Below are positions 12,001-27,801 of a DNA stretch of 64,000 nt, piece after piece (the stretch's first letter is position 1; each line of letters starts with the position of its first letter). Source of the stretch: Phallusia mammillata (taxonomy: Eukaryota); contig OZ281499.1 of the NCBI GenBank assembly GCA_965637545.1, positions 15,624,001 through 15,688,000 of the forward strand, read 5' to 3'. The translations under genes were made by a program, and so were the position numbers. The notes under the pieces were generated by a model. The model saw only the letters and a list, made by a program, of their open reading frames with translations. It ran no database searches and was not told the DNA's origin.

Positions 12001-15000
12001 ACAAATCTGTTTATCAGTTCATTTGAGTTCAGTTTTATTATACTTTTTTGCCAATTGTATACGGGACCTCATTGTAATAGATTTTGCATTAGCCTACAGT
12101 TGTTCCCAACCAGGGAGTAATTCTAAGCAAGGGAAGAATTTTAAAACCTGAGGTAAAGAATTTACTTCAAATTTTACATGTGGTTTGTAAATAGACACTT
12201 TAGCTTTGGAAATATAACCTGTAAAGTTGGTAAAAGACCCAATTTTAATGGACATTTGTATGGTTTAGTATTTACTTTGTAGTCTATTGGGGAGGAATGA
12301 GAAAGTTTTGAGTTGTTAAGTGAGGAATTCACCGAAAAAGGTTGAGAACCACTGGCCTAGTAAAACAAGGTTGTACCTGGACGATTGGCCGAGGAATTGG
12401 CACTTGGAAGTCTGTTTTCGGGTCTTGGTGGGTTTCTGGAAATGGGTTGACCCGGTCCGTGGCCCAAATCTCCAAACTCGGCGAAATTTGGGTGCAAAGT
12501 TGGGTGTACAAGTCCCTGCAGAAAAACGATACATTAGAAGTCATGTCAAGACATGATGCCCGGTACTTCTACATCATAGATTAGCCGTTTATGCTTCTGC
12601 ATCTTTGAGTTGGCTTTTTTATGCTTCTACATTTTAGAATTTTTACATTTTAATATTTTTCAAATACTTTACATAAAATTGTGAAAGGATGAAAAAAAGG
12701 AAATTTACTGTGCACCACAACAACAGTTTTTAGCAAGTCAATGTTTTACCTGAGGTAGATCGGTTGGTAACGAGTCGTCGGTTTTGCTTCGTTTTGACTC
12801 GCTTGGTGCAAGTTCATCAACGTCCTGCAAAAAATATGTAAAGTTTTTAAAAACGAAATCTCAGCAGGCAATTTAATACAAAACAAGAAAAAAAGTAGCA
12901 AATCAGAAAAAAAAACAAATTCAATAATTTTAAAGCAACAGCACAACAGTTCAAATCGTATTTTGATCCGTTACAACACGGAAATCTGTTGCAACAAACG
13001 CGAGAACCGCTGGAAACAGAACCTTGTAGTGTCGGTTGTTATGGCAACAACAAGAGAAAGTCAACTACCCTGCGCTGCAAATGTGCGTCGTTCGACCTTT
13101 TCACCTTCGTAGTTAATATTTGACAAGAACACATTTGGAAACAGGATGATTTTGAAAGCACGCATTATGTTATTTGTTGCACACAATACTTTTGATGTAA
13201 GTTGAACAACTGTAATTGTTATGGCAGTGTAAAATGCATTTTTGGTAACATTTGACATACATTCTGAAAAATTCGGTTGTTTGTTTTGCTTAATTTAAAC
13301 TCATTCACGGCGATTTACTGCACTAATCTCGTTGAAAAAGCCGCCTCGCCTTAATCGTGCAAAGTCGTTTCTATAAGCATTTCCACCAAAAAACAATACA
13401 TAGAAATAAACAAAATTGCAAGATTAGTTCAGCTTTAAATTAGAGTAAATCGCACTTAATGTTCTGTATGTAAGCATTTACAGTAGAAGCTACATTATTG
13501 TTCAAATTACACAGGGTTGTTACAGGTTTAGCGTACGCAAATACCAGGTACTACTAGTAACCGACACAGCTGCCGCCCGCTGATAATCGATGACGGGTGT
13601 CACGTGAGCCGCTTCAACACGACTGACGTAGGAAACCGAACAAAGGGTACGCTCCGTTAGCTGTGCTTGAATTGTGCGCTTTGACTGGGCGTTCCCATGC
13701 AAACTTCAACGGACCTTGTGTAACACGAGGGCTCCATAACAAAGCCACGCCACGAAGTGAGCACTTTCAGTTACCAATGTTGAATTTGGTTTTAGTGGGA
13801 TTTTATGAAAATAGTTAAGGTAGGAAATTAGTATGTTTTTTTTATTTCTGAGGTTAAAGTTCAACCTTAAAATGTGATGTGAGTTTGTAATTAGTTCTTA
13901 CACTTATTTCAAACTTGTCATTTTAATTTTTTTTACAGAACTTTCAGTTTCAGTATTTTTGTAAAAAGAAATCTTAAATTTACATTGCGCATGAGTAAAT
14001 TTTTAATTTGCATGTATTTACTGAAATTATATTTTATGATTTACTATTTATTGTTTCTATGGAGCGGACGGTTATAAGACCTCCACAGCTGATTACAACT
14101 AATCAGTAATTACAACCATCGAAGGGGATTTTTTTCTGCGACGCCATTCTCTTTAGTCCACATAAACAAATTTAAAATGAAATACTATACGCGTTTGTGA
14201 GACAAATAAAATCATGTAATTTTTAAATACCGGGTAAAAATAGCATTAAAAATTGTATTTGTTTAAATTTTGATCATTTTAAATGTTTTCATTTTTGTTT
14301 TCAAATATCTGTTTTTATGTAACTTAACAAGTGGATACATTTAGCATTTAGGCAATAAACTTTTTGCATAAATACTCATAACAAAAGATAGACACAATAT
14401 CACAAAGAAGTAAAGAACCAACTATCTGCAAAATTCAAACAAACAAAAAACTATAAAAGTAATGTCATTAAATAATTTTCAAAAACCTACCTGACATTAC
14501 AACAAATTAACAAAGTAAAATAATCTCAAGAAGTCTTTGAGGCACATTTGAACAAATAAATTTGATATGCTGCATCAAACAAAAGCCTGACTGTCGCTGA
14601 GTTGGGTACAAAGCATAAGCAAACTAAACAAATATATAAAAACCTAAAGAAAAGTCCACACCTTTAAAAAAATGTCACATTACTCATAAGGGTAAATGTT
14701 TTATAAACACACACCACCTTTTAGCGACCAACATGTATCTGACAACAAGTGCGAGCAACTCATGTATGTCTGACTGTTCATGAAGCTCAGTGACTGGTAA
14801 AAAAAATCAGTGACTGGTAAAAAGCATAGCAAGTAATGTTTTAAAGCCGCGAAGTGTGTTGTGCAGCTTAGCGTCAGTACTATGCATTTGGCAGGATATC
14901 CTTCTGGCAACACACATCCACTAAGCGCAACAACAGTGCACGGCAAGCTGGTTTGTTCATGCAAACGCGTTCTTCTTCTACTAGCATGACTGCCCGTACT

Positions 15001-18000
15001 TAGCATGTATATTGCAACAATCGATGCACGGTCCGCGCACAGCATTAACTCTACACTTGTACTGCATATAGGACAATATTTCCATTTGCCATAGAACTGG
15101 TTTTGATAATCCCAGCAAACTGCGTTCAACAAAAAACTAGCCTAGGGCTATGACTACAACGTACAAACTCTATAAGCTAAGGCTAGTACTGAGAGCGCAC
15201 GCACACAAAAAAGTCTCGTTATTCAAGCCCCTTTACCGTTTCGGCTAACAGCATACACCGGGAAACTAAACCGCAGATGCGAACGAGGCATCTGTCCTAT
15301 GGCGACATACAATCGATAGCCTCTACTCCCAGGAAGTGAAACGAGAGAGCTATACGCGAAGAAGGACGTTGCTGAGCGTCATGCACGTACAGTTACGAGG
15401 GAGAACTCGTTTTTGTGTTCGTTGGAGTATTACGACAGGTCTGTGTTCAAACAGGCGTATCAACCATGCCAAGTTACAATGGGTTGGTGTTGGTGTAGCG
15501 TAACGGTTCTCGGCCCTGCCAAGTATTTGAACAACGTCCGAATAACGCTTCGATTTGTTTGCGTGACCCACATAATGTCATGGTTTTTGTTACCGCTCTT
15601 GTTAGTGTTACTGAATAAATACAGGTACATCGGATGTTTCGATACATTTGACATACACTGCGACAAAAATTACATCGACATAATAATATTAGAAAACATA
15701 AGGTAATTTAAGGGCTCAAAATTATTTTTAATTCGTGAAAAAAATATTGACTTTTTGCGTATCGATAACAAAGAAAGCTACACTTTTAATATCGATTGCC
15801 AGTACACAAATATCTTATCTCCCAAGACGAATAAATACCAAGTTGACATGCGTCTAATTAATCGACTCTATGGCGCCACCTCGCGGTTAAAGAAACACAG
15901 TCAATGCTGCCACTATATCGCGACTGAGATATAAATATCACTACGCTTAACTTTTCCAAGGAAGTAATTAATTGATTTAATATCCCGCGTACACAAAACA
16001 TCACGGACTAATGGGAAAACACCATTAGCTATTTCTATGTTACTCATAACGCTAATTTGCATGCAATATTTCCTACTATAGACCCGAAGCAAAAATAAAA
16101 AGGCGTAGAAATAGCATGTCAGACTTGGCGACGCAAAATAATACATTGCGTGACATTGCAATATTAACATGTACTTTAGAGATGACCTATTTTGACAAGA
16201 GAAACTTGAAGCTGGGAATTTTAAATTTAACTCTCGTTATGACCATCAACTGGGATTAAGGGCACTATAGGTCAAACACTTTGACATGACTTAACCCCAT
16301 CGGCAAATATTTGCAACGGGTGAACCATAACCGAGGTTAGGGCACTATTATCTAAATCAACATGATATCTTGTCAGATAGCTTGATAACCGAAAAAAAAT
16401 ACAAAAAATGCATTTAACGAGGTTTTGATCTAATTTTACACTCAAAAATTTAAATTATGTTTTTTTTAAGGTAGACTAAAAACAGGCCGATATATAACAG
16501 GGAAGTTTCAACTGCCCAAAATGTATTAGCCTACTAAAAAAGACCCTTCTTGATTTTTGAAATAAAACGTAATTCTATTGAATTATTCTATTCGAATAAG
16601 GTTTAGTGGAAGTGTTTTCCTTACTCAAGCCACTATTTATCACAATAAAACCCCTCTATTATGAAAACACATAAGTTACAACTGTCACAAGCGCCGTTGC
16701 CTAAACTCGTAAAATATCCAACACGGTCAAAAAAACTCAAAAATCTCGTATTGCGTAATTGACAGACGGGCAAGGAATTATCTTGATGCAGTGTCTTTCT
16801 AATCCGTATACAAATCGGCGCTTTTCGTGCCTCGTACAGTCCATGGCAATGTGTTTGCATTTACAACGCCCGGCTGTGTGCATGTTTAGACGTTGAACGC
16901 CGAAATTAGATTGAGGCCGTAAACAGTGGGCAAAAATTACAGCGTTAAGCCATATTCCTTTGTACATGAGTGTTGATGTGACAGATAAGAGATGCGGGTA
17001 CTGAAGAACGCCTATTAAAGCAATTCGACAATGCGTGGGGTTTTGCTAGTACAGGGTACATACAGGCAATTAAAAAACAATTAAAAACAACCAATATTGT
17101 AGGTAAAAATGTGGTTATTTTTTAACCTAAACTTTAAACACTTATAGTTTTGTCGAAACTTAACAGTACCAAATGACTACGTTTGTGGCACCTTACTGGC
17201 AAATTTATTTGTAACAACAAACCAATGTATATATTGACAACAAAATTGACATAACGTAGCTAAAAAAGTGGTAATTTTGTCAACTAAATCCCAACACTTG
17301 AATTTGTCGAAACCACAGTGCTAAATGGCTACGTATATGGTACCTTTTTGTTTGTAGCAACAAAATATATATATATTTACGTTGGAAGACAAAATTGCCA
17401 TATTGTACTTTTTATAAACTAAATTTCAAACACTTAGTTTTGTCGAAAACAAACAGCACTAAAAGAACTACCATAAATAAGCCGTTTATCACTGCGTTTT
17501 TGAGTGTATTTTATCGCCTTTATTGCTTTATAACAACTTCGTGTTTTAATTTATGTCATTACCCAGATGTATGGGACGTCGAAACGTCGGCTTATTATAA
17601 CAAAAAACTGCTGTAAGAGCTACATATGCACCTTTTTAGGCAAATTCATTTATAACAAAGCAAGCACGTCCTATCTATGCATTTACAAAACTTTTAAAGA
17701 CCGTTGGAGTTTAGCATTAAGTTCGTGTTTTTGTTTGTGAATTCGACCGAGAGCTTTTTGCATACAGTGGTTTTGCATGAAGTTTATAACTCCACATGCA
17801 GCGAGACGACGCTACGCAGAATAACATGCTTAATTTGAGACAATCATTTGCGTACAGACTCTTAATTGCCGAAAAAGCGTTCCAAGATTTCACCAACAAG
17901 ATTCGAGCTATGCTGTAGTCCTAAACAGGATAAACAATGCAAAAATATGGTACTAATAATAGATACTGTGTTTGGACGTGATTTGTGCACAAAACAACGA

Positions 18001-21000
18001 GTAGCATAAAAGTTACAGACAGATTGAAAAAAAAATAGGATTCAAGCTATACTGTAGTCCCTACCTGGCTAAACCATACACAAATATAATACTATTAATA
18101 GATATAGTTTCAGGGCGTGAATGTGTACGAAAATTTTTGGTGACTGATTAAAAATCCCTTGACTTTCAAATGGAAGTGACAGACTAGTTTAATTTCCGCT
18201 GGCCTGATGTAAGCCCAATACCATGTGGTTTTCTTGGAAAAACAACGCAAAATTGCCCGGGTCAAGTTGTAGTTAAGTTTGTTTTCAAAGTGTGCTTTGA
18301 AAGCCGCTTGCCTATCAATCATATCAGGTTACGTCAGAAAGGTAATGACTTACGTTTTGTTTTGACCTCCAAATAGAACTGAGCGCGGTAATTGACATGA
18401 GTGTTTGTTGTGTAAATATAAAAACGCGCCTTGAGCCAAATGCGCTGTCACAATTAAGGAAAAACAAAATCGGTCCGCAAACGGCCGTTTAGGATCGAAA
18501 GTCCTTGTCGAATATAAACCACAAACACCTACCTTTCGTTTTTCTTGCTTCGGAGCGGGTTCCGCTGATGGGATGTAAGGGGTTGTTCCAGGCTGTTGAC
18601 AAAAACACAAACAGTTAATTAGTTGCAAAACTATATGCGCCCAATATGAAGATTTGACATGATGACCAAGGCGAGTTGAACAGCTCTTTAATCGTATGTG
18701 GTCAAGCAGGGCATATAAATTAAGAATAAAAACACATACAGTTACTTAGTTCCAACATTGTATGCGACCAAACACCATTAACGAGCCACACGAAGATATA
18801 TGTTTCGATTTGACATGATGAAACCTTACCAAGGCAATTTGAACACCACTTTTACCGTATGTGGTCGCGCAGGCCATTAAAAATTAATATGTGCCTCATA
18901 AAACTGACTCACGATGGTCGATTTTTAAATAATTACTGCAATGGGATTAGCCCAATACAGGAGCCTGTGATCAGTATTTGCGGGCAATGGGAGTTTTAAG
19001 AATCGATAGATATTTCGTTGAAATATTTATGACAGATGAAAGCAGAAATTTGCGTTTGTAAGGAGCGCTGAATTTATTAGGTACTTTATTGCACTGACAA
19101 TGCTTCAACGCCTCATACCTCTACACCTCATTGTTTTGGTAAAAGTTAGTCCCAAAGTATTTTTACAATAGTTAAAACACAAAAGTACGTATGGCCTGTT
19201 TTGCGGATCAATGCGTTTTTGTAAACCAGCTTAAAAAATGCGAAGTCAAAATCGTAAAATGGCTGATACATTGAAAATTCTGTATTTAGCATTTAGCCTA
19301 CTTCAACACTTTGTAAAAGCGGTGGGTATTGTTAAAAGTTTCTTTTGCAAGTCTACCACAAAGAGCTGGGAAGCCAACTGTAACGTTAAAAAGGGTCCAA
19401 TCAAGTCATTTTGGGAGGCAACAATAAAAGTGCAAAGTCACGCTGAGTCAAGTTTCCCGTTACGTTGATACAACAGCAATAAAAATGCAAAAGTGACATA
19501 TTTTGTTGAAAGATGAGTACTTTAGTATTTAAAAGCATACAAGATTTATGGAACCTAAAAAATGCCATTTTCAAAGTCTTAGAACCACCAGACTGGTTTC
19601 AAAAGGTCAACGGTTTTGAAGGCCGGATGCCTAAAATATCGCTCTTTCGCAAGTATAATCTCCTCTTGATCGAAAAAAAGGTGGTGGTTTGCCTAATTTA
19701 CATTTTAGTCTGCAATGCAACGGCAAGATAGGATCTCGCGGCATGATAACAAAGTCAACAGCAAGTCACATACGCCTGATGCCACAGTTGTACACAATTT
19801 TGCGGTGAAATTAGGTTGTGTAAGTTTATTTGACGAAAAAATGGTAAAATTTCATGAGAAAAAATCTCAGCACACACAAGGCGCTGACTGGTTTAATTAA
19901 AAATCTCTAACCCGCCGGCCATTATGCCTTTTGTGTGCTCGCGTGTCAATCACACCCAGAGTGAATGGAAAGGTAAACAGTCATCTCGAAAGGCTGAATA
20001 GAAGACTTGCTCTCATTTGAATCAACGTTATTCGCCCGTAGCGCAATAAATAACGGACAAATGTTACAATTACAAAACTGGCAAACGGTGTTTAAACACC
20101 AAAGAGGGAACTAAGCGAAACGACTGGGCTCAGGGCGTGGTCAAAACGGCCTGATGCAGACATTTTATGTGTCCCAAAATCATATATGCTGTATAAACAC
20201 AGGAAAATCAAACAAATACATATTAAGGCTACTACATTTTACAAATACACATAGAAAATGTTTAACATGGGCAACAAAAACATTTATTGTTTACTGATAC
20301 ACGTTGTTTTAAAAGGAGAATATTTCGGGGTTTAAGGGGTAAAAATGGGTAAATTCTGTTAAAAGTTAGACAATTCTTTAGAAAACCTCACATTGCACCA
20401 ACCAACAGAGCACATAACTCCTAGATGATGTACTTTAGTCAGTACAGCCGTTTTCAAATTTTTACGTTTTGGGGGCCTGCGGGTGAACTGCTGGGTCATT
20501 CGGGGTCAAACTCCAGGAGGATCAAATTTGGATTAATATGTAACATCAGTCCAAATTTTAATAAATTTGGAGCACCCTTTCTTGACCAAACGCGTTTAAC
20601 AAACTAGCGTTAGACAGAAAAAAGAAAAAAAGAAAAAAAAAATACGGACAAAAACAATATGCGTCCCCTTCATAGAAGGGGACCCATAAATACACATAGA
20701 AAATGTTTAACATAGGCAACAAAAACATTTATTGTTTACTGATACACGTTGTTTTAAAAGGAGAAAATTGAACCTTTTCGAAAACAAAACATGTTAACGC
20801 CGTAAATGAATGCAAGATACCGAAGTAAAATGACCGCATTTCAGTTCAAAACACGAAACTTAAATCAAAATGTTAACGGCTAGTCACAGTTTAAGATTGC
20901 CTGCCTAGATATACCGTAATCGTCACGTTTATTCGAGAATTCGAAATTGCCCGTGTAACGTACGATTTCAAAGAACCGCCCAAATCAACGTTTTCATCAA

Positions 21001-24000
21001 CACACAAAAGTACAAACAAAATTGGCAGAAAGGGTGTAAGAGTTTGTCCGCAAATGATTCAGATTCAGACCCTATACTATCAACAGACAACAGCACAAAC
21101 GATACAAAAGTCGGCTTGGATTCGTTACACTTTCAAATTGCGAATGAAGCGAGAAGCCCAGTAACCCGAAACGGGCCCACCTGAGAAAAATTCAAAGGCC
21201 CATTATACAGTGACAGATCGGTTTTTAGTTACAATGGGTCTCGTGGCAATGTGAAATACATGTTCGGTCGCAAACCAGAAAGTGTCTGAAAGTTTCAGAG
21301 CCGGTCAGACACGGCTTGTCCGGTCTACAGGGAAACAAAAACATGGCTTTGGTCTATGTACCTCGCAATTGAGGCGTGTAATTAAAACAACCGCATTCGG
21401 TATGCCTCAACTCCCGGGGCGCATTAATAACACGCTTTTACTGATTCGTAACATCGATACCTTGTCAATTTGACCACAAAAAAGTAAAGGAAATCGCTTG
21501 TCATTTTTATCGATTTTGATATAGTTGACGTTTTTTACCCTTGACATGCTCCCAGTAAGCATCATAGCTATTTCGCAATGGCATATTTAAACTACATACT
21601 GTGACCTAGTAGGAGAAATTAGAACATGCAAGGACTAATTGCAGGCGTTCCCAAGGGGTAACAACAGCCACTGTGATTTAAATCCAGCGGCCTGTTATCA
21701 AGTTCAGGCATTGTGCATTCGAATACGTTAGCGACCTATATATGCTGCGACCAAACCAAAAAGGCCGCAATGATAGCATCTATATCAGATGACCGAAATC
21801 TTGCAAACGAGTGACACATGATACCAGTCTTGTTAAATGACTGCAGCATCGCTAAAAAGAAGTTTCTAGAAATCTCACCAGGGGCGCTGCATTAGACCTG
21901 ATTAACGGGTCAATTCCATATCGCTAGAATATACTTGAAATGTTATAACTTATATTTTTTTGGTGGACATGTAGACGTCAAATCATTATTTTACCCAATG
22001 TTTTGCCACATCGATATTTCAACTAAATTAAAACAACACTTTAGTCTTGTCTGATTAATTGAACATTGCACAGTTTTTTAATCGCTACATAGATTTTAAA
22101 TACCAAAAGTATTATTTTCCAACAGTTAAGATAATGATTCCTACCATTATTTTATATTCAAACCGCATTAATTGGTCCATTTTGGTCGTTACATGGATAA
22201 AAACATTAGTAAGGTAAACTTTACATAAGAACAAGTCAATTATGCTAACGGCTGTTTTTCCAGGGCGTGGAGCAAGGCACTACTATGATGGATTTTTTTA
22301 CAATACAACTTCAACGCTCGAAAGTCCAGTGTACACAAACCAATTCGCCACAAAACAATACATCACTGCGGTTGGAATTACACATACGCACACTTACACA
22401 CATACACATTCACGCAAACTCGCCACAACAGCATGGGCAGATAAATTAATCATGAAGGCTGCACGACTGGGTGAGTGGCTGATGAGAGAACCATTGAAAT
22501 AAGGCTCTATTTACACAAAATAAATTTCCTGTTGTTCGCTGACACAAATTTCAATTGGACCGAGTGGCTTGGAGTGTTGTTTGCACGGCTCTATCTCTCA
22601 GGAGGAGCGCCCTTTCTCGTTTTCCTCCCACTCCTCCCAACATTCACAAGCAAGGAGCCAACGATTCGGCGTTCCAAAACGATTTATCATTACAGTATTG
22701 TTTTTTCAAAGGGATAAATATGGGCTTTTATGTCGAAGTGGCGCGCTCATAGCCCACTTAAAGAACATTTTCCCAGTCTTAATTTGAAACCGCGTTTATT
22801 CGATGTAAGGGCATGCACACCAAAACCGGTAGGACACATTTCTTGGTCTTGTACTACGCCACTTTCGCAAGAACTTAAGTAAATCTGCTGTTGTACAAAA
22901 TTTTAAAAAATTACCTAAAATAAAATCCTAAACTACTGCGTACTGAGGTTACCCCAAATCCCAAAGTCCACCCGCAAGTGAAATGTTAATTTGGGTAATA
23001 ATTAAACTGCAAGCATAATTCAATGTCCAAAAACTGTTGTCATGGCACGAAAAAAGGCGTCACATCTCCATTTTCAACAGCTAAACGCGACGCGTGCTGA
23101 GCATGGCGCGTACGGCGGTAATTAATTGAAATGTACGCAGAATAATCACGCGGCCTAGCACTTAATTGTGGCCCAAATTGTAAGGTTGGTTTTTGTATTG
23201 ACCACAACCAGCTCGTGGCAGGGCCATCAAAGTCACCACAAAATTGTGTGGCCTGTGAAAATGGCCGAGGAACTTATTCATCACTGATGCCGCGTGCCAC
23301 TTTCAACGAATTTTAATTGCTGGACATTTTAACGACGGCGCTATTTTTACCGACAACCTAGTAATATTACGCATGATAACAGGTCGGTCAAGGGAAATTT
23401 TTGTCCATTTCAAGCTGGTTTTACTAGACGTTCATCTATATCCAGACACGGAAATGAAAAGCGAGTGTATGTGGTGCGTTCAGGTAATATTAACACACAA
23501 TTGATCAAACTGATCGTGCCTTCGGGCAATAGACACATTCACAATATAACCAACATAAACTAATTCCAATATGAATTGTGTTTACACGCAAATAAAGCGG
23601 TCCACTTGCATAAACTTATCACCTTGTTTCCGCGAAAACGTAATCGGCTTGCAAGAAAGGGGGTCCAGTCGGTAATTAATTAACGTAAAATGGAAACAGC
23701 AGCTATCCTATATGCTCAAACATGCGTTGTAAAGGCGAGAAAAGCCAAGTAACATTAAGTGTTGAAATTCTATCCCTCGCTGAAGTGAATGTGGTAATGT
23801 TGGCAAAAGAGACAAAGCAAACAACACAACATGCTCTAAGTGGCCGTGAGAAAGCAGACCGATTCGACTGTTTTTGGTGCAACAACACTGTTTTTCCATA
23901 AAAGCTAATGGGGTCAAATAGGGTACTCGACGTGAATGGGCTACTTCAACTGAATCGTGGTGTATTAGAGCTACACTGGCGCCCCACAAAGCGAAAGATA

Positions 24001-27000
24001 ATTTTCCAGCGGGGTTATTACAATAAAAGCAGTTTGTAGTTATGCGTGCAATATTTGACTGGAATTTTGAATGTCAACATTAGAGCTACGTCAGTTTTGG
24101 AATTGCCTAACAATGTCAAACTTTTAATCGATATTGTAGTTTTGTCAACGAACTAAGTGACTGCCGTCCAAACATTAAAACACACATTATGACTGAAAAC
24201 TGAATCGCTTTTCTACTTCATTTAAATAACGCAAAAAAATTACAAAAAAACTAATATATTTCAGAAGTTTTAACGTTATCGTTTTACAAGGCAATTGACA
24301 ATACTTTGCTGAGTTGACCTAAAACGAAACACCGACAAATCAATCAAAACCTCATGACCAATAAACACAAAACAAACCGAGTATTGATTTTGTCCTGCTG
24401 TCTAGGTCAACTGGCAATGTCGAAATGCTGCCACAGCATCGAACAAATTGAAAAGGATTAAAATGATTAAAATCAATCACATAAAAAGGCTCCCTAGGAC
24501 AGGTGAGGGGAATTCCCATGATGTAATTGCATTTAGATATGTCCAAAAGCAATCAGTGACAAAAAATAATTGCAAAAATGTAACAAAGCAATTTGTCACA
24601 TAGAAGGCTAAAATTCTATTTTTATTCAGAAAGCTAAGATTACTATTTGACCCATAATGTTTTGGCAAAGAAAAATGCCATCTGACAACATTTTGATTGA
24701 TGCCTGTTATTTTTTTGGTGGACTCATATTTACTGACTATGACCCGTAAGTTGACCTTTCTTGCCCTCAAGCATAGAAACAGTAGACCAGGAAATTCCAA
24801 TTACATGCCCAAGTTGCTTTCTTTTAAAAATGTCATGACTTTTGAGTTGGATGTATTTGGCACAATTTGTTTTTAAACTATAATTTTGAAGACAAAATTT
24901 GTTTTGCTGAATTTTTTGAGTAAACTTTTAACCAAATTTTAATGAAAAAAACATTACTTCAAACATTTTCCGACAAACATTTAAATTAACAGCACAACAT
25001 TGACCTATTTACAACTTTAAAATGTTGTATTGATATGGGGAGCATTTGGAACAACAAGGAAGCTTAACACAACAAACAAGTAAGACTATGTTTGCAAAAG
25101 ACCACAGATAAACGTTTGATTATTCTTGGATGGGCAAGAAAGGGACAGTGAAAACAAATCTATTGATATACAAGAACTCAATCTGTCAACATAATAGAGC
25201 TTTGCGGCACACAGCATGGCAAAGCAATAATGCCCCGAATTCAACAACAACCTTTATTACTTGACTTCCTGTGTTAAACAAAGAAGCCATCAACAGATAA
25301 ATGGCACAGACTCTTTTGTCATAAAGGTTGTTTTTCCACACAAAGGATCAGAATTCGGTTAAGTCCTTTTTATCACAATAAAGATAGAGGAAAATCTTTT
25401 CAAAAAACTAAACAGAACATTTTGTTTGAAACAAAACAAGTTACTTTTTTTAAATTACCCAGAAATGTATCTTAGTTACAGGTATACTTTTGGATAATAG
25501 CATAGTGGAGTAGCCCACCATAATTTGACAGTGATTAAAGGGCCATCCACCCATCTACACTTGTAATCTTCTACTCTGCACAGGTCATTAATCCTCTGCT
25601 TAGCAACAAATGTCAGTGGATAATCATGATTGTAATCACTAGTTTAGCTCTTGCCTTTCAAAATTGGGACACGGTTACTAGGTCAAAACTTAGTCAAACA
25701 AAAAAACTGTTATTTGCGAGTGAAGTGCAAAATAACCCTAGTAGTATTGTTTTGTGCAATATATATATAAATTAACAACCATGAAATTCATTTGGGAACA
25801 AATTTGATGTTAACAGTACTTGTAAATCTCGCTTTAAGTGACAATGTTTGCCTTAGCCAAACAAGACATGGAGCGTAGACAATTACCTTCTTTTTCAAAA
25901 TTTCACATTTTCGGTGAATGCATATTTGCTTTCCTTTGGCACGATTGATGCAGTTCATACATGATCCACAATTCTCCTTACGCTGACATGGTCCACAATG
26001 CCCACATGCTTTTCGCTTCTTTCGAGAGTTCTGCAAAATATTGAATATATTTTCATAAGAAATGACTTAATATTAAATTTATGTACATCACCATCTGAGA
26101 TGAACTTACTTTTTATCCTTTATAAAACATTAATTATTCATAAGCAACATTCTATTAAACTCCCTGAATGTTTGCACACTGAACTAAATATAAAAGTGCA
26201 GATAAATCTGATAACATTACCACTGAACATCACATATATTAGCATCACACAGAAGCTTGACACATCAATTAGTTATGGTGCCTCTTTAGTTTGACAGCAA
26301 GGAAAATTTACCGAACATAATAATGCTAAAAATAGAATAAAAATGTTTTGGATGTTACCAATTTAAGAAAACACGTACATTTATATCTCCACGAGGGTCC
26401 ATGTCTGATCCATTGCTTGGATTAGTGGCTGGAGATGGGACAAGACCTTTTCGATCTGTAAATAACATGAATTAATTAACTAAGTTAAAATACTGTATTT
26501 TACATAAAATACTGTATTTTTCAACAAAGTTAGTATATTGAAGAAGTATTACCTGTGTGCCCTGACAATAGCGATGGAAATGGTGGCCTTAACGACGCAT
26601 CAGAACCCATGCCGTACCCAGCAAGTGGTGAACTTCCACGATGATGCAATCCCGGAAACCTACATGACAAACCAAAGTTTGGTCACAAAAGTTCACAGCA
26701 AAAAACAGTTTTACAAGGCAATTGACATTTGAATTCAACAGGCGTATTAACAGCCCGAAAATTAATCACAAGGAAATCTAGTCAAACATCATGCCTCATT
26801 AAGGAAACACAATTGAAATGTAATGCCAAGTAAGAAGACCAGAATGCTTGGAAACAAAATTGTACATCAAGGGTTAAAAAGTATTTTAAGTAGTTGAGAG
26901 TACACAACAAATGGCACTGTAAGCAGAATGTCATTACAGCTGAGAAAGCAACACTTAACATTTTATAGAATACTTTTAGTCCAGTTGGTTTTGAATAATT

Positions 27001-27801
27001 GATAAGATTGTCAGTTGTGAGCCACTGAAATGGGAAAGCAAATCTAGTTATAACACATGAGGGCTTCTATAGCTTTAAAGCACAATGCATTATGGCATCA
27101 AAGCTTTTGCAGAACACACAACTACATTTTGTAATGCAAACAAGGGCATTCATTCCAATTGTCCATGCATGAGCATAAAATTGACACCGAAGTATTTGAG
27201 TGTTACTAGGTAACGTATAAAGTGTAACAAAACATTGTTTGTGCTGTACAAAAGTTTACCTTGTCATCATGTGTGGATTAAATAGAAGGTTTCTGTCGGT
27301 CATGGATTGGCTTGGTGGTAAATGCATGGGCAAAGGGTTGGAAAATCCAGGATAGGAAGGCGACGGGAATAGAGGAGACTGCGTCTGGGGTTGAATGCCG
27401 GATTGCCCGTAGTTCAAAAGGCCGGGATTCGTCCTTGGTGTTATGTGCAAAGGGTGGGTTGCAGCATGGTAGGGATGCGACCCTAGCATGCCTGATCCAA
27501 AGAGAGACTGGCCGATATCGTTGATCCCGCCAAACGGAAGGGACGATGCACTACTTGTTGGATTTGGGAACATACTGTCACGATTGTAGGGGTTTCCGAG
27601 GCCTGAACTGCCATCGTAAGGTGGCACATAGGACTGTGGGTACAAAGATTGCGTGGCTGCAGAGCCGGGATCAGCACCATGCGTGGATGGCGAGTAACCA
27701 ACAGCTGGTACAGGTGGTACACTTTGCATGGTACCAGATAAATGGTCGGATAACTTACGACCTGCGTCTTTCATTACAGATACATTGTTATTTAAGTTCA
27801 T
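1..27801 (-). CDS. TET: TET-family methylcytosine dioxygenase with N-terminal CXXC, 19 coding exons, 3' end runs off the window
   Basis: Join (minus): 27260-27801, 26553-26659, 26379-26455, 25887-26030, 18533-18592, 12750-12824, 12377-12515, 9352-11862, 7414-8064, 6791-6918, 6663-6719, 5956-6164, 4955-5198, 4083-4229, 3297-3449, 2215-2426, 1061-1712, 197-370, <1-83. All introns are GT-AG, phases are consistent and the frame stays open. TET motifs: [106 protein letters not shown]. Confidence 0.95.
197..370 (-). CDS. TET: TET coding exon 18 (third Fe ligand His and 2-oxoglutarate-binding Arg)
   Basis: [43 protein letters not shown]...IEK. Confidence 0.96.
1061..1712 (-). CDS. TET: TET coding exon 17 (Pro-rich insert and return to DSBH)
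   Basis: Includes the 219-aa ORF; ends [24 protein letters not shown]|GTAAGA. Confidence 0.92.
2215..2426 (-). CDS. TET: TET coding exon 16 (start of DSBH insert, basic NLS-like motif)
   Basis: [43 protein letters not shown]...ENT(W); phase 0 to 2, matches exon 17. Confidence 0.85.
2600..2777. mobile_element. Degenerate hAT-like fragment with ccgactcc repeats
   Basis: Repeated gactccga/gacttc motifs ending ccgacttcacaaccc; only one terminus recognisable. Confidence 0.4.
3297..3449 (-). CDS. TET: TET coding exon 15
   Basis: [51 protein letters not shown]. Confidence 0.95.
3476..3640. mobile_element. MITE family A (pogo/Tigger-like), degenerate copy
   Basis: TA|cactaaacctcggt ... gcgaggtttact; internal ccgaattagg and tacaaatcatttg shared with the other copies. 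Confidence 0.7.
4083..4229 (-). CDS. TET: TET coding exon 14 (DSBH, Fe-binding HxD)
   Basis: [49 protein letters not shown]; 147 nt, phase 0-0. Confidence 0.96.
4692..4878. mobile_element. MITE family A (pogo/Tigger-like), 187 bp
   Basis: TIR CAGTAAACC(G/T)CGGT at both ends, flanked by TA on both sides. Confidence 0.85.
4955..5198 (-). CDS. TET: TET coding exon 13
   Basis: [35 protein letters not shown]...APDAHKNQ. Confidence 0.96.
5956..6164 (-). CDS. TET: TET coding exon 12
   Basis: [38 protein letters not shown]...RRCATNE; not in the ORF track; ttttag| and |GTAAGT. Confidence 0.95.
6663..6719 (-). CDS. TET: TET coding exon 11
   Basis: [19 protein letters not shown]; 57 nt, phase 0-0. 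Confidence 0.95.
6791..6918 (-). CDS. TET: TET coding exon 10 (Cys-rich domain)
   Basis: [43 protein letters not shown]. Confidence 0.93.
7414..8064 (-). CDS. TET: TET coding exon 9 (ends at the start of the Cys-rich domain, FPPCACIP)
   Basis: Extends the 211-aa ORF; ttgttcag| and CAG|GTAAGG; phase 1-1. Confidence 0.9.
8192..8530. mobile_element. MITE family A, inverted copy with internal 85-bp tandem amplification
   Basis: TA flanks; 3' end accgaggtttactg; gacattggtt recurs at 8281, 8366 and 8451. Confidence 0.85.
8881..9167. mobile_element. MITE with 14-bp TIR CAGTGGCGGATCTA
   Basis: Perfect inverted termini; ATACC directly on both flanks. Confidence 0.8.
9352..11862 (-). CDS. TET: TET coding exon 8 (2511 nt; Pro/Gln/Ser/His-rich low-complexity region)
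   Basis: Contains the 739-aa ORF; the frame is open upstream to the ctttttag| acceptor at 11863; donor GAAG|GTGAGA; phase 1-1. Confidence 0.9.
12097..12354. mobile_element. hAT/Charlie-like MITE
   Basis: cagttgttcccaacc ... ggttgagaaccactg; TSD degenerate. Confidence 0.7.
12377..12515 (-). CDS. TET: TET coding exon 7
   Basis: tttctgcag| and CAG|GTACAA; 139 nt, phase 0 to 1, the shift needed to enter exon 8; [46 protein letters not shown]. Confidence 0.82.
12750..12824 (-). CDS. TET: TET coding exon 6
   Basis: ttttgcag| and CAG|GTAAAA; 75 nt, phase 0-0; [25 protein letters not shown]. Confidence 0.8.
13035..13048. promoter_or_regulatory. RFX X-box-like motif GTTGTTATGGCAAC
   Basis: Fits the X-box consensus RTHNYY-WT-RRNRAC; 210 bp upstream of TET exon 6. 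Confidence 0.4.
15873..15886 (-). promoter_or_regulatory. CTCF-like motif CCGCGAGGTGGCGC
   Basis: Close match to the CTCF core consensus; similar motifs at 47956-47969 (-) and 54484-54497 (+). Confidence 0.4.
17130..17480 (+). repeat. Degenerate tandem repeat, about 140-150 bp, about 2.5 copies
   Basis: aacactt..tttgtcgaaac recurs three times, followed by similar acag..aaatg.ctac and tttgt..caacaaa blocks. Confidence 0.65.
18533..18592 (-). CDS. TET: TET coding exon 5 (60 nt, [20 protein letters not shown])
   Basis: Acceptor tgtgtttttgtcaacag| and donor AAG|GTAGGT; phase 0-0; continues CXXC KKK with PGT..PSAE, as recalled for CXXC4. Confidence 0.7.
20243..20765 (+). repeat. 78-bp direct repeat pair (20243-20320 and 20688-20765)
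   Basis: aaatacacatagaaaatgtttaacat(g/a)ggcaac...aaaaggagaa; one mismatch. Confidence 0.92.
20321..20687 (+). mobile_element. Helentron/HINE-like non-autonomous element between 78-bp direct repeats
   Basis: A-rich/AGAAAAA tract, ggacaaaaacaatatg, then terminal hairpin GTCCCCTT-catag-AAGGGGAC (20663-20683); related fragment at about 495-560. Confidence 0.5.
25887..26030 (-). CDS. TET: TET coding exon 4: CXXC zinc finger
   Basis: [48 protein letters not shown]: eight Cys in CXXC spacing; ttttgcag| and |GTAATT; 144 nt, phase 0-0. Confidence 0.93.
26379..26455 (-). CDS. TET: TET coding exon 3
   Basis: tttacag| acceptor and |GTACGT donor; phase 1 in, phase 0 out; (D)[25 protein letters not shown]. 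Confidence 0.75.
26553..26659 (-). CDS. TET: TET coding exon 2
   Basis: catgtag| acceptor and |GTAATA donor; phase 2 in, phase 1 out; (R)[35 protein letters not shown]. Confidence 0.75.
27260..27801 (-). CDS. TET: TET coding exon 1 (putative start; Pro/Ser/Gly-rich N-terminus)
   Basis: 181-aa [17 protein letters not shown]...HMMTR; donor AG|GTAAAC at 27259, phase 2, matches the next exon. Confidence 0.75.

What the first reader, a model, noticed from the sequence alone, without database searches (positions are those of the whole stretch)
18533..18592. Hidden 60-nt exon makes the TET N-terminus look like CXXC4/IDAX
Midway through the 13-kb gap between the CXXC exon and the rest of TET is an exon with strong splice sites. 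It extends the finger to CEILKKK|[11 protein letters not shown]. Human CXXC4/IDAX, as I recall it, ends CEELKKKPGTSLERTPVPSAEAFRWFF. The layout also resembles free-standing CXXC4/5 proteins: about 242 aa of low-complexity sequence, then the CXXC, then this peptide. It is established that IDAX is thought to derive from an inversion that split ancestral TET2. This locus may preserve the unsplit state, including the post-CXXC peptide and a long intron where such a break could occur.
Basis: partly seen in the sequence, partly recalled or inferred. Interest (0 to 1): 0.75.

Follow-up and report, generated by a model that had tools for sequence, protein, structure and literature searches.

The report
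Conserved microexon after TET's CXXC finger
The 60-base exon is real and is spliced into the sea-squirt TET messenger RNA, but it is best read as the local copy of an old small exon that follows the CXXC finger in TET genes of acorn worms, amphioxus and fish, not as a preserved CXXC4/IDAX tail.

Summary
Observation confirmed. On the minus strand, 18592-18533 is a 60-nt phase-0/0 exon encoding [20 protein letters not shown]. Spliced contigs from 4 of 4 runs (4 studies) join it to exon 12824-12750. The same contigs run on into the end of the CXXC exon (25887). The closest relatives are Ciona. A C. intestinalis RefSeq protein and a metatranscriptome cDNA from a third tunicate carry the homologous 21-22-aa exon.

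Interpretation only partly supported. The recalled CXXC4 tail is correct (KKKPGTSLERTPVPSAEAFRWFF). The window peptide beats shuffles against it (8-10 per 4000-5000). The signal falls away when an ortholog is used on either side: other tunicates read PPTD or PPNE, other CXXC4s read SSGE or TSGE, and there is no AFRWFF. In CXXC4 the two matched blocks lie in different exons.

What explains the exon better is a deuterostome-wide layout. The CXXC exon ends at KKK in phase 0. A 51-66-nt phase-0/0 microexon with a basic end follows, inside a long intron, and then the body of TET. I found this in amphioxus (57 nt), Saccoglossus (57 nt) and eel TET1 (51 nt, a cassette exon). Vertebrate CXXC exons, including those of CXXC4/5, carry 6-8 extra codons before the intron. 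The "unsplit" arrangement is already the accepted ancestral state.

The parts
18533..18592 (-). 60-nt phase-0/0 coding microexon, [20 protein letters not shown]
   Evidence: Sequence and splice sites. Spliced contigs in 4/4 runs. Homologous exon in C. intestinalis P0151 and in cDNA L001.
25887..26030 (-). CXXC exon, [48 protein letters not shown], which ends in phase 0 directly after KKK
   Evidence: Pfam zf-CXXC 35.4 bits against a cut-off of 26.5. Best PDB matches are the TET3, CXXC4, CXXC5 and TET1 fingers. The loose end of the spliced contigs maps to 25889-25918.
18593..25886 (-). 7,294-nt intron between the CXXC exon and the microexon
   Evidence: Follows from the junction shown by the loose ends. 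Its contents were not examined with reads.
12825..18532 (-). 5,708-nt intron between the microexon and the next exon
   Evidence: Joint skipping 5,708 nt with GT..AG ends in 4/4 runs.
12750..12824 (-). 75-nt phase-0/0 exon, [25 protein letters not shown]. With the KRK at the end of the microexon it gives RK-x10-KRSK, which resembles a bipartite nuclear import signal.
   Evidence: Sequence. Contig pieces 12749-12823 joined to the microexon. Homolog EPSDSFPGNESKRSKSD...TDLPQ in L001. The import-signal reading is inference.
12377..12515 (-). Further exon, [24 protein letters not shown]..., that follows 12750. The start is shown; the end at 12377 is inferred from the donor cag|gtacaa.
   Evidence: The loose end before 12749 in 4/4 runs maps uniquely to 12485-12514. 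Homolog [16 protein letters not shown] on the other arm of L001.
26379..27801 (-). N-terminal low-complexity coding exons (about 27801-27265, about 26661-26551, about 26459-26379), collinear with C. intestinalis P0151
   Evidence: tblastn of P0151 on the window: 59% identity over the first exon and 57-67% over the next two. The exon ends are approximate.
4886..5260 (-). Part of the TET catalytic region (Cys-rich region and start of the double-stranded beta-helix)
   Evidence: Pfam Tet_JBP, 44 bits against a cut-off of 34.9.

Best explanation
Window 18592-18533 (minus strand) is a genuine coding microexon of the single TET gene of a Ciona-like ascidian, included in every spliced contig sampled. 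It adds 20 residues directly after the last helix of the CXXC finger (...RKCEILKKK|[20 protein letters not shown]|DVDEL...). It is the tunicate counterpart of a positionally conserved post-CXXC microexon of deuterostome TET genes. In that layout the CXXC exon ends in phase 0 at KKK. A 51-66-nt phase-0/0 exon follows, with a Pro/Val-Gly start and a Lys/Arg cluster at its end, isolated in the long intron that separates the finger from the body of the gene. Shown here: the splicing, the conservation in three tunicates, and the same layout in amphioxus, Saccoglossus and eel TET1. Inferred: the peptide is a flexible linker whose basic end, together with KRSK in the next exon, acts as a nuclear import signal or as an added contact with the DNA backbone. 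Its likeness to mammalian CXXC4/IDAX (PGT, PSAE) is mostly coincidence specific to this species. At most it reflects a shared helix-ending x-G-T after KKK. It is not a preserved IDAX tail.
For: Splicing: (joint in 4/4 runs from 4 studies, GT..AG ends) (the loose ends map uniquely to the flanking exons). Tunicate conservation: P0151 ends ...KKKPGTSPYLPPTDSAPSKQEKRK; the L001 cDNA reads KKK|PGSTPYIPPNEQMQMLKQEKRK|EPSD...; collinearity. Same layout elsewhere, each with canonical AG/GT sites: amphioxus KKK|gtgagt, 57-nt exon VGTTSSGMEQRTKKAQTKT 8 kb downstream, next exon 17.7 kb further on; Saccoglossus KKK|gtaaga, 57-nt exon VHGNPLDPVRVMKRPVLKK, next exon 13 kb further on; eel TET1, 51-nt exon LGCEDIAKPRKKKRVSK 13 kb after the CXXC exon, present in isoform X1 and absent in X2; mammal-type TET1, PLE|VIKENKRPQREKKPKVLK| bounded by isoforms P0088 and P0079 and by read-through models. 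Against IDAX specificity: the ortholog-swap shuffle tests and the exon boundary after SLE/ALE/PLE/LKE/FTE in the vertebrate paralogs.
Against: Sequence similarity among the microexons of different phyla does not exceed composition-preserving shuffles, so their orthology rests on position, phase, size and the basic tail only. The window peptide matches mammal-type CXXC4 better (p about 0.002) than it matches any TET microexon. An x-G-T directly after KKK recurs in CXXC4 (PGTS), in one TET3 (SGTLNE, P0029), in amphioxus (VGTT) and in tunicates (PGTT). That recurrence could reflect real continuity at the protein level despite the different intron positions. No function was tested. Inclusion in all tissues is not shown, because contigs hide rare isoforms.
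Confidence: 0.78

Rival explanations
1. One reading: both blocks of the peptide (PGT and PSAE) are homologous to the CXXC4/IDAX tail, so this locus preserves the pre-split TET2/IDAX state, including the peptide after the finger.
For: The exact pair scores 34 with only 8-10 of 4000-5000 shuffles as good. Both peptides start directly after KKK. [quoted passage not shown]
Against: PSAE is not conserved in two other tunicates or in non-mammalian CXXC4. There is no AFRWFF. The two blocks lie in different exons of CXXC4, and the PGTSLE block belongs to an extension of the CXXC exon found in all vertebrate paralogs and absent from three invertebrate deuterostome lineages. Homology of both blocks would need loss of one intron and gain of another.
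Confidence: 0.06
2. Partial homology: the last exon of CXXC4/5 ([RK]xx(x)P[ST][GA][EA]AFRWF[FQ]) descends from the ancestral TET microexon, whose slot it occupies. TP-x-IPSAE in this species would then be a faint relic, and PGT would be coincidental.
For: The CXXC4/5 terminal exon is the first exon after the CXXC exon, the same slot as the microexon. Window versus the CXXC4 last exon alone: 27/4000 shuffles.
Against: The other tunicates score at chance against that exon (2727/4000 and 704/4000). CXXC4/5 lack the basic cluster that is the one trait common to all the microexons. TET1 and shark TET3 keep a basic microexon in that slot.
Confidence: 0.1
3. Only the start is ancestral: a KKK-x-G-[TS] cap of the CXXC C-terminal helix is old and kept at the protein level in tunicates, amphioxus, CXXC4 and some TET3s, whichever exon encodes it.
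For: PGT[TS] or PGST in three tunicates, VGTT in amphioxus, PG[TS]S in CXXC4, SGTLNE in P0029 TET3, PGEFTE in shark TET3.
Against: Saccoglossus has VHGN. TET1 and CXXC5 have PS, and mammalian TET3 has VGLL. Three residues are too few for statistics. Pro and Gly are common in linkers, and they terminate helices, so convergence is plausible.
Confidence: 0.3
4. The exon is a rare or artefactual inclusion (cryptic exon, assembly chimera) and is not part of the main protein.
For: Only assembled contigs were available, not raw reads.
Against: The same joint occurs in four runs from four studies at the highest contig depths. A conserved homolog exists in a RefSeq protein and in an independent cDNA. 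The reading frame is preserved and both ends of the peptide are conserved.
Confidence: 0.02

Closest known systems
Vertebrate TET1 small exon after the CXXC exon (exon 3 in the numbering of PMC5737541). Mammal-type: VIKENKRPQREKKPKVLK. Eel: LGCEDIAKPRKKKRVSK.
   Same: It is the first exon after the CXXC exon, 51-54 nt, phase 0/0, ends in a basic cluster, and is isolated by a long upstream intron. In human TET1 that upstream intron holds the alternative promoter of the CXXC-less isoform, which splices into exon 3 (PMC5737541).
   Different: Vertebrate CXXC exons run 6-8 codons past KKK before the intron; here the intron is directly after KKK. Sequence similarity is not above chance. In eel the exon is a cassette; here it is included in all sampled contigs.
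Amphioxus and Saccoglossus TET post-CXXC microexons
   Same: The donor position is the same (KKK|gt, phase 0). Both are 57 nt against 60 nt here, both are phase 0/0, both sit inside a 16-26-kb gap, and both have a basic end. Amphioxus begins VGTT against PGTT here.
   Different: The interior sequences are unrelated, and the tunicate version is Pro-rich with PY[IL]P.
CXXC4/IDAX and CXXC5 C-terminal tails (KKKPGTSLERTPVPSAEAFRWFF and KKKPSAALEKVMLPTGAAFRWFQ)
   Same: They follow the same ...RKCE.LKKK helix of a TET-type CXXC finger. PGT and PSAE are identical to mammal-type CXXC4 in this one species.
   Different: There is no AFRWF motif and no stop codon; the protein continues into TET. The exon boundaries differ. 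The finger here has KGKQ, not TGHQ. The match is not conserved in orthologs on either side.
Mouse Tet3 CXXC isoforms L and S (PMC3653909)
   Same: The CXXC exon is spliced either to a small intervening exon or directly to the large exon. This is the same three-part layout, with the CXXC exon about 13 kb upstream.
   Different: The size and sequence of that mouse exon were not checked here, and in mouse it is alternative.

Membership tests
TET dioxygenase with an N-terminal TET-type CXXC finger | zf-CXXC domain most similar to the TET1/TET3/CXXC4/CXXC5 subgroup | tested here: met
   Pfam PF02008, 35.4 bits. Top PDB matches: TET3 2.9e-13, CXXC4 7.5e-11, CXXC5 1.6e-10, TET1 3.8e-10.
TET dioxygenase with an N-terminal TET-type CXXC finger | Tet_JBP oxygenase domain in the same gene | tested here: met
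   PF12851, 44 bits, on 5260-4886, same strand and downstream. Spliced contigs of 3.8 kb link the CXXC exon through the microexon into the downstream exons.
CXXC4/IDAX-CXXC5 free-standing CXXC proteins | Protein ends about 20 residues after the finger with ...AFRWF[FQ] | tested here: not met
   The exon ends KQEKRK and is spliced onward. The motif is absent from all three tunicate peptides.
CXXC4/IDAX-CXXC5 free-standing CXXC proteins | CXXC exon extends 6 codons past KKK (P[GS]xxLE) before a phase-0 intron | tested here: not met
   Here the donor is directly after KKK. The vertebrate boundary is inferred from models that diverge after SLE or ALE and was seen in DNA for eel TET1.
CXXC4/IDAX-CXXC5 free-standing CXXC proteins | TGHQ motif in the finger | tested here: not met
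   The window has AKGKQ.
CXXC4/IDAX-CXXC5 free-standing CXXC proteins | No catalytic domain in the same transcription unit | tested here: not met
   See the Tet_JBP row above.
Deuterostome TET post-CXXC microexon (a grouping proposed here) | First exon after the CXXC exon, entered in phase 0 | tested here: met
   compare.
Deuterostome TET post-CXXC microexon (a grouping proposed here) | 51-66 nt, a multiple of three, isolated within a long intron | tested here: met
   60 nt with flanking introns of 7,294 and 5,708 nt. The others are 57, 57, 51 and 66 nt.
Deuterostome TET post-CXXC microexon (a grouping proposed here) | Lys/Arg cluster at the 3' end | tested here: met
   KQEKRK here; KKAQTKT, KRPVLKK, KPRKKKRVSK and REKKPKVLK in the others.
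Deuterostome TET post-CXXC microexon (a grouping proposed here) | Sequence similarity above chance between phyla | tested here: inconclusive
   Between 459 and 3970 of 4000 shuffles score as well. The peptides are too short and too biased in composition.

The most novel reading that the evidence does not exclude
The C-terminal exon of CXXC4/5 sits in the slot of an ancient deuterostome TET microexon. The TET2/IDAX split would then have cut the gene in the intron next to that microexon, and this tunicate's TP-x-IPSAE would be a surviving trace of the shared ancestor. More broadly, the layout of CXXC exon, long intron, basic microexon and gene body would be a roughly 500-million-year-old module, and its long intron would be the recurrent site of alternative promoters and of gene splitting.
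Probability: 0.12. Interest if true: 0.6.

Novelty: new member of a known kind. Interest (0 to 1): 0.35.

Why it matters
The practical gain is a correct gene model. The TET protein of this ascidian contains a 20-residue linker, and a further 139-nt exon, that a scan of the raw sequence would easily miss. For TET evolution, the useful result is not an IDAX relic. It is that the finger and the body of the gene are separated in hemichordate, cephalochordate, tunicate and vertebrate TETs by the same small basic exon, stranded in a long intron. That long intron is where mammals placed the promoter of CXXC-less TET1. It is also the kind of place where an inversion could have freed CXXC4 from TET2. 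This gives a concrete, testable landmark for locating the breakpoint. The IDAX-specific reading that gave the finding its high first-stage score is weak.

Tried and rejected
2. The search for homologous proteins was not used. Its length filter makes a 48-aa or 20-aa query uninformative, so the representative search was used instead.
3. Fetching DNA failed for a CXXC4 (P0114: file too large; P0073: not on record), a TET3 (P0029: gene 275 kb), C. intestinalis P0151 (not on record) and two likely non-deuterostome TETs (P0103, P0146: not on record). The CXXC4/5 and TET3 exon boundaries therefore rest on divergent or read-through protein models, and nothing can be said about protostomes or cnidarians.
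4. Paper searches for the tail motif, for Ciona with CXXC4, and for a TET microexon found nothing relevant.
5. I considered that the RefSeq 301-aa C. intestinalis protein, which ends exactly at the microexon, marks a free-standing CXXC isoform. The only alternative joint seen here (18533->17920, one run, low depth) reads on for 58 more codons, so this gives no support for a stop at that point.
6. I considered DNA contamination as the source of the contigs. This is rejected because they skip 5.7 kb at GT..AG ends.
No contig taken to be human was fetched, and mammal-type CXXC4 proteins were used only as the protein sequences returned.
Full report
**The sequence**

On the minus strand the claimed exon is exactly as described. 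It has a pyrimidine-rich acceptor (tgtttgtgtttttgtcaacag), 60 nt with no stop, and a donor AAG|gtaggt. It translates to [20 protein letters not shown].

The CXXC exon is 26030-25887, 48 codons, and ends ...[10 protein letters not shown] in phase 0 with donor AAG|gtaatt. The next exon begins at 12824 after ttttgcag. It is 75 nt and encodes [25 protein letters not shown].

Pfam finds zf-CXXC on the finger exon and Tet_JBP on 5260-4886. By sequence the finger is closest to the solved TET3, CXXC4, CXXC5 and TET1 fingers. All of these share the ...RKCE.LKKK ending.

**RNA evidence**

A run search with the N-terminal exons found 20 holders labelled as one organism, from 6 studies. I laid four of them, from four studies, on 12700-18650.

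- Each run has one contig that joins 12823 to 18532 and skips 5,708 nt, with CT..AC ends. These are GT..AG on the coding strand.
- The depth of these contigs is 21-293. The intronic contigs have depth of about 4-15.
- In all four runs the contig continues beyond 18594 with a 30-mer that occurs once in the window, at 25889-25918, the end of the CXXC exon.
- On the other side it continues before 12749 with a 30-mer unique to 12485-12514.

Both predicted junctions are therefore supported. The second loose end also reveals a further exon starting at 12515. No exon-skipping contig was listed, but contigs do not report rare forms. The runs are only guessed to be RNA, yet a 5.7-kb GT..AG skip is not something genomic DNA would give.

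**Which organism, and is the exon conserved?**

The representative search with the finger exon gave its best hits in Ciona intestinalis.

- P0001, a Ciona intestinalis protein, is 98% identical over the finger.
- Its cluster mate P0151 is XP_026692788.1, annotated "methylcytosine dioxygenase TET1", 301 aa. It ends ...CEVLKKKPGTSPYLPPTDSAPSKQEKRK, exactly at the end of the homologous exon.
- P0002 comes from a 2,395-nt metatranscriptome contig, L001. Its cDNA reads KKK|PGSTPYIPPNEQMQMLKQEKRK|EPSDSFPGNESKRSKSD...TDLPQ.
- tblastn shows that both proteins are collinear with the window exons: 59% identity in the N-terminal exon, 92-96% in the finger and about 52-54% in the microexon.

The window is therefore a Ciona-like ascidian that is not C. 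intestinalis itself. The exon is 60-66 nt in three tunicates. Its start PG[TS][TS]PY[IL]P and its end KQEKRK are conserved, and the middle is variable. The exon is already present in a public annotation of a relative. It is "hidden" only to someone reading the raw sequence.

**The CXXC4 comparison**

P0081 and P0129 end ...CEELKKKPGTSLERTPVPSAEAFRWFF, and CXXC5 ends ...KKKPSAALEKVMLPTGAAFRWFQ.

The window peptide aligned locally to the P0081 tail scores 34. Only 10 of 5000 shuffles and 8 of 4000 shuffles do as well.

The signal does not survive replacing either partner with an ortholog (shuffle counts):

| Comparison | Shuffles scoring as well |
|---|---|
| Window vs other CXXC4s (PGSSLERTPVSSGE..., PGSSPERVIVPGGGE..., PGGGGGVLERPPSVPTGE...) | 8-32% |
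| Window vs CXXC5 | about 33% |
| C. intestinalis vs P0081 | 2% |
| Third tunicate vs P0081 | 16-17% |
| Window vs the CXXC4 last exon alone | 0.7% |
| The other two tunicates vs the CXXC4 last exon alone | 68% and 18% |

PSAE reads PPTD and PPNE in the other tunicates. In other vertebrates it reads SSGE, TSGE, PAGE, PTGE or GGGE. No tunicate has AFRWF.

**Exon boundaries**

Among the 150 hits, many vertebrate gene models diverge from one another immediately after a fixed point:

- KKKPG[TS]SLE in CXXC4
- KKKPSAALE in CXXC5
- KKKPS..PLE in TET1
- KKKVGLLKE in mammalian TET3
- KKKPGEFTE in shark TET3
- KKKPTSFAE in hagfish

Several continue with V, as expected when a GT donor is read through. 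All vertebrate paralogs therefore carry 6-8 extra codons on the CXXC exon before a phase-0 intron. In CXXC4, PGTSLE lies in the CXXC exon and RTPVPSAEAFRWFF in the last exon. In the window the intron lies directly after KKK.

**The same layout in other deuterostomes**

I fetched three TET loci and placed their exons by tblastn and by reading the splice sites.

| Species and locus | End of CXXC exon | Microexon | Distance from CXXC exon | Next exon |
|---|---|---|---|---|
| Amphioxus, L002 | ...CTELKKK\|gtgagt | 57 nt, VGTTSSGMEQRTKKAQTKT (cag\|...\|gtattg) | 8 kb | starts DWTAELPG, 17.7 kb further |
| Saccoglossus, L003 | ...CTELKKK\|gtaaga | 57 nt, VHGNPLDPVRVMKRPVLKK | 2.9 kb | 13 kb further |
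| Eel TET1, L004 | ...RRKPSALSLAE\|gtaagg | 51 nt, LGCEDIAKPRKKKRVSK | 13 kb | 3 kb further |

RefSeq isoforms X1 and X2 of eel TET1 differ by exactly these 17 residues. In mammal-type TET1, VIKENKRPQREKKPKVLK is bounded upstream by the PLE boundary. Downstream, two isoforms continue differently after KVLK (P0088 and P0079).

Two published observations fit this layout. Mouse Tet3 splices its CXXC exon either to a small intervening exon or directly to the large exon (PMC3653909). Human TET1 has its CXXC-less promoter in intron 2, just upstream of exon 3 (PMC5737541).

The window's 60-nt exon thus fits a layout shared across deuterostomes:

1. The CXXC exon ends at KKK in phase 0.
2. A short phase-0/0 exon with a basic end sits in a long intron.
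3. The body of the gene follows.

Three invertebrate lineages, including an ambulacrarian (Saccoglossus), splice directly after KKK. That is the likely ancestral state, and the vertebrate 6-8-codon extension is derived.

**Limits of this reading**

The microexons of different phyla are not similar above shuffles, so orthology rests on position, phase, size and the basic tail.

An x-G-T directly after KKK recurs in several places: PGTT in tunicates, VGTT in amphioxus, PGTS in CXXC4 and SGTLNE in one TET3. This may be an old helix-capping motif kept at the protein level. I give that about 30%.

**Mechanism (inferred, not tested)**

The peptide is a Pro/Thr-rich linker followed by KQEKRK. With the next exon it reads [17 protein letters not shown] in the window and RK-EPSDSFPGNES-KRSKS in L001. 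Both fit the classical bipartite nuclear import pattern of two basic residues, a spacer of 10-12 residues, and then three basic residues out of five.

A basic end is the one trait shared by all the microexons. The likely role is nuclear import or added contact with the DNA backbone next to the finger, on a flexible tether.

**Novelty and score**

The exon is a new member of a known kind. It is already modelled in C. intestinalis and corresponds to the small exon after the CXXC exon in TET1. The "unsplit" CXXC-TET arrangement in invertebrates is the published view (PMC3653909), and Ciona is reported to have a single tet gene (PMC6976628).

The cross-phylum conservation of the microexon layout was not mentioned in the papers I could search. 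It is a modest new observation.

I saw the same residues: AKGKQ here and in the closest hits.

Noticed in passing
window 12377-12515 (-): An additional coding exon ([24 protein letters not shown]...) lies between exon 12824-12750 and the large low-complexity exon. Its start is shown by contig loose ends in 4/4 runs. Its end at 12377, and its join to about 11862, are inferred from splice sites and from homology to L001.
   Followed up: partly
window 17401-17920 (-): In run X1 only, a low-depth contig (12.8) joins the microexon donor (18533) to an acceptor at 17920 (tcctgtttag|gac) and then runs unspliced for about 520 nt. After KRK the frame reads on for 58 codons to a stop. This may be a minor alternative 3' end or splicing noise.
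   Followed up: partly
protein P0151 (C. intestinalis XP_026692788.1): The RefSeq model named TET1 is only 301 aa and stops exactly at the end of the homologous microexon. Either the model is truncated at the long intron or there is a real short CXXC-only isoform. The locus could not be fetched.
   Followed up: partly
L001:1-2395: The metatranscriptome contig is a hairpin chimera: bases about 1-1240 are the reverse complement of the later part. The two arms differ after ...TDLPQ. One arm carries the [11 protein letters not shown]... exon and the other an unrelated 100-nt stretch containing a stop, so two splice forms or an intron fragment were fused.
   Followed up: no
window 25887-26030 (-): The finger has AKGKQIC where vertebrate TET, CXXC4 and CXXC5 have TGHQIC. 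The same KQ is present in all the closest hits (P0001-P0005), in a group of short fish proteins and in arthropod-type TETs.
   Followed up: partly
window 9338-11862 (-): A large Q/P/N/S-rich low-complexity exon (open for more than 739 codons) gives a local GC of 0.52 and strong GC and AT skew, against about 0.37 GC elsewhere.
   Followed up: no
L004:14904-14954 and proteins P0191/P0136: Eel TET1 isoforms X1 and X2 differ only by the 17-residue microexon, so in at least one vertebrate the post-CXXC microexon is annotated as a cassette exon.
   Followed up: yes
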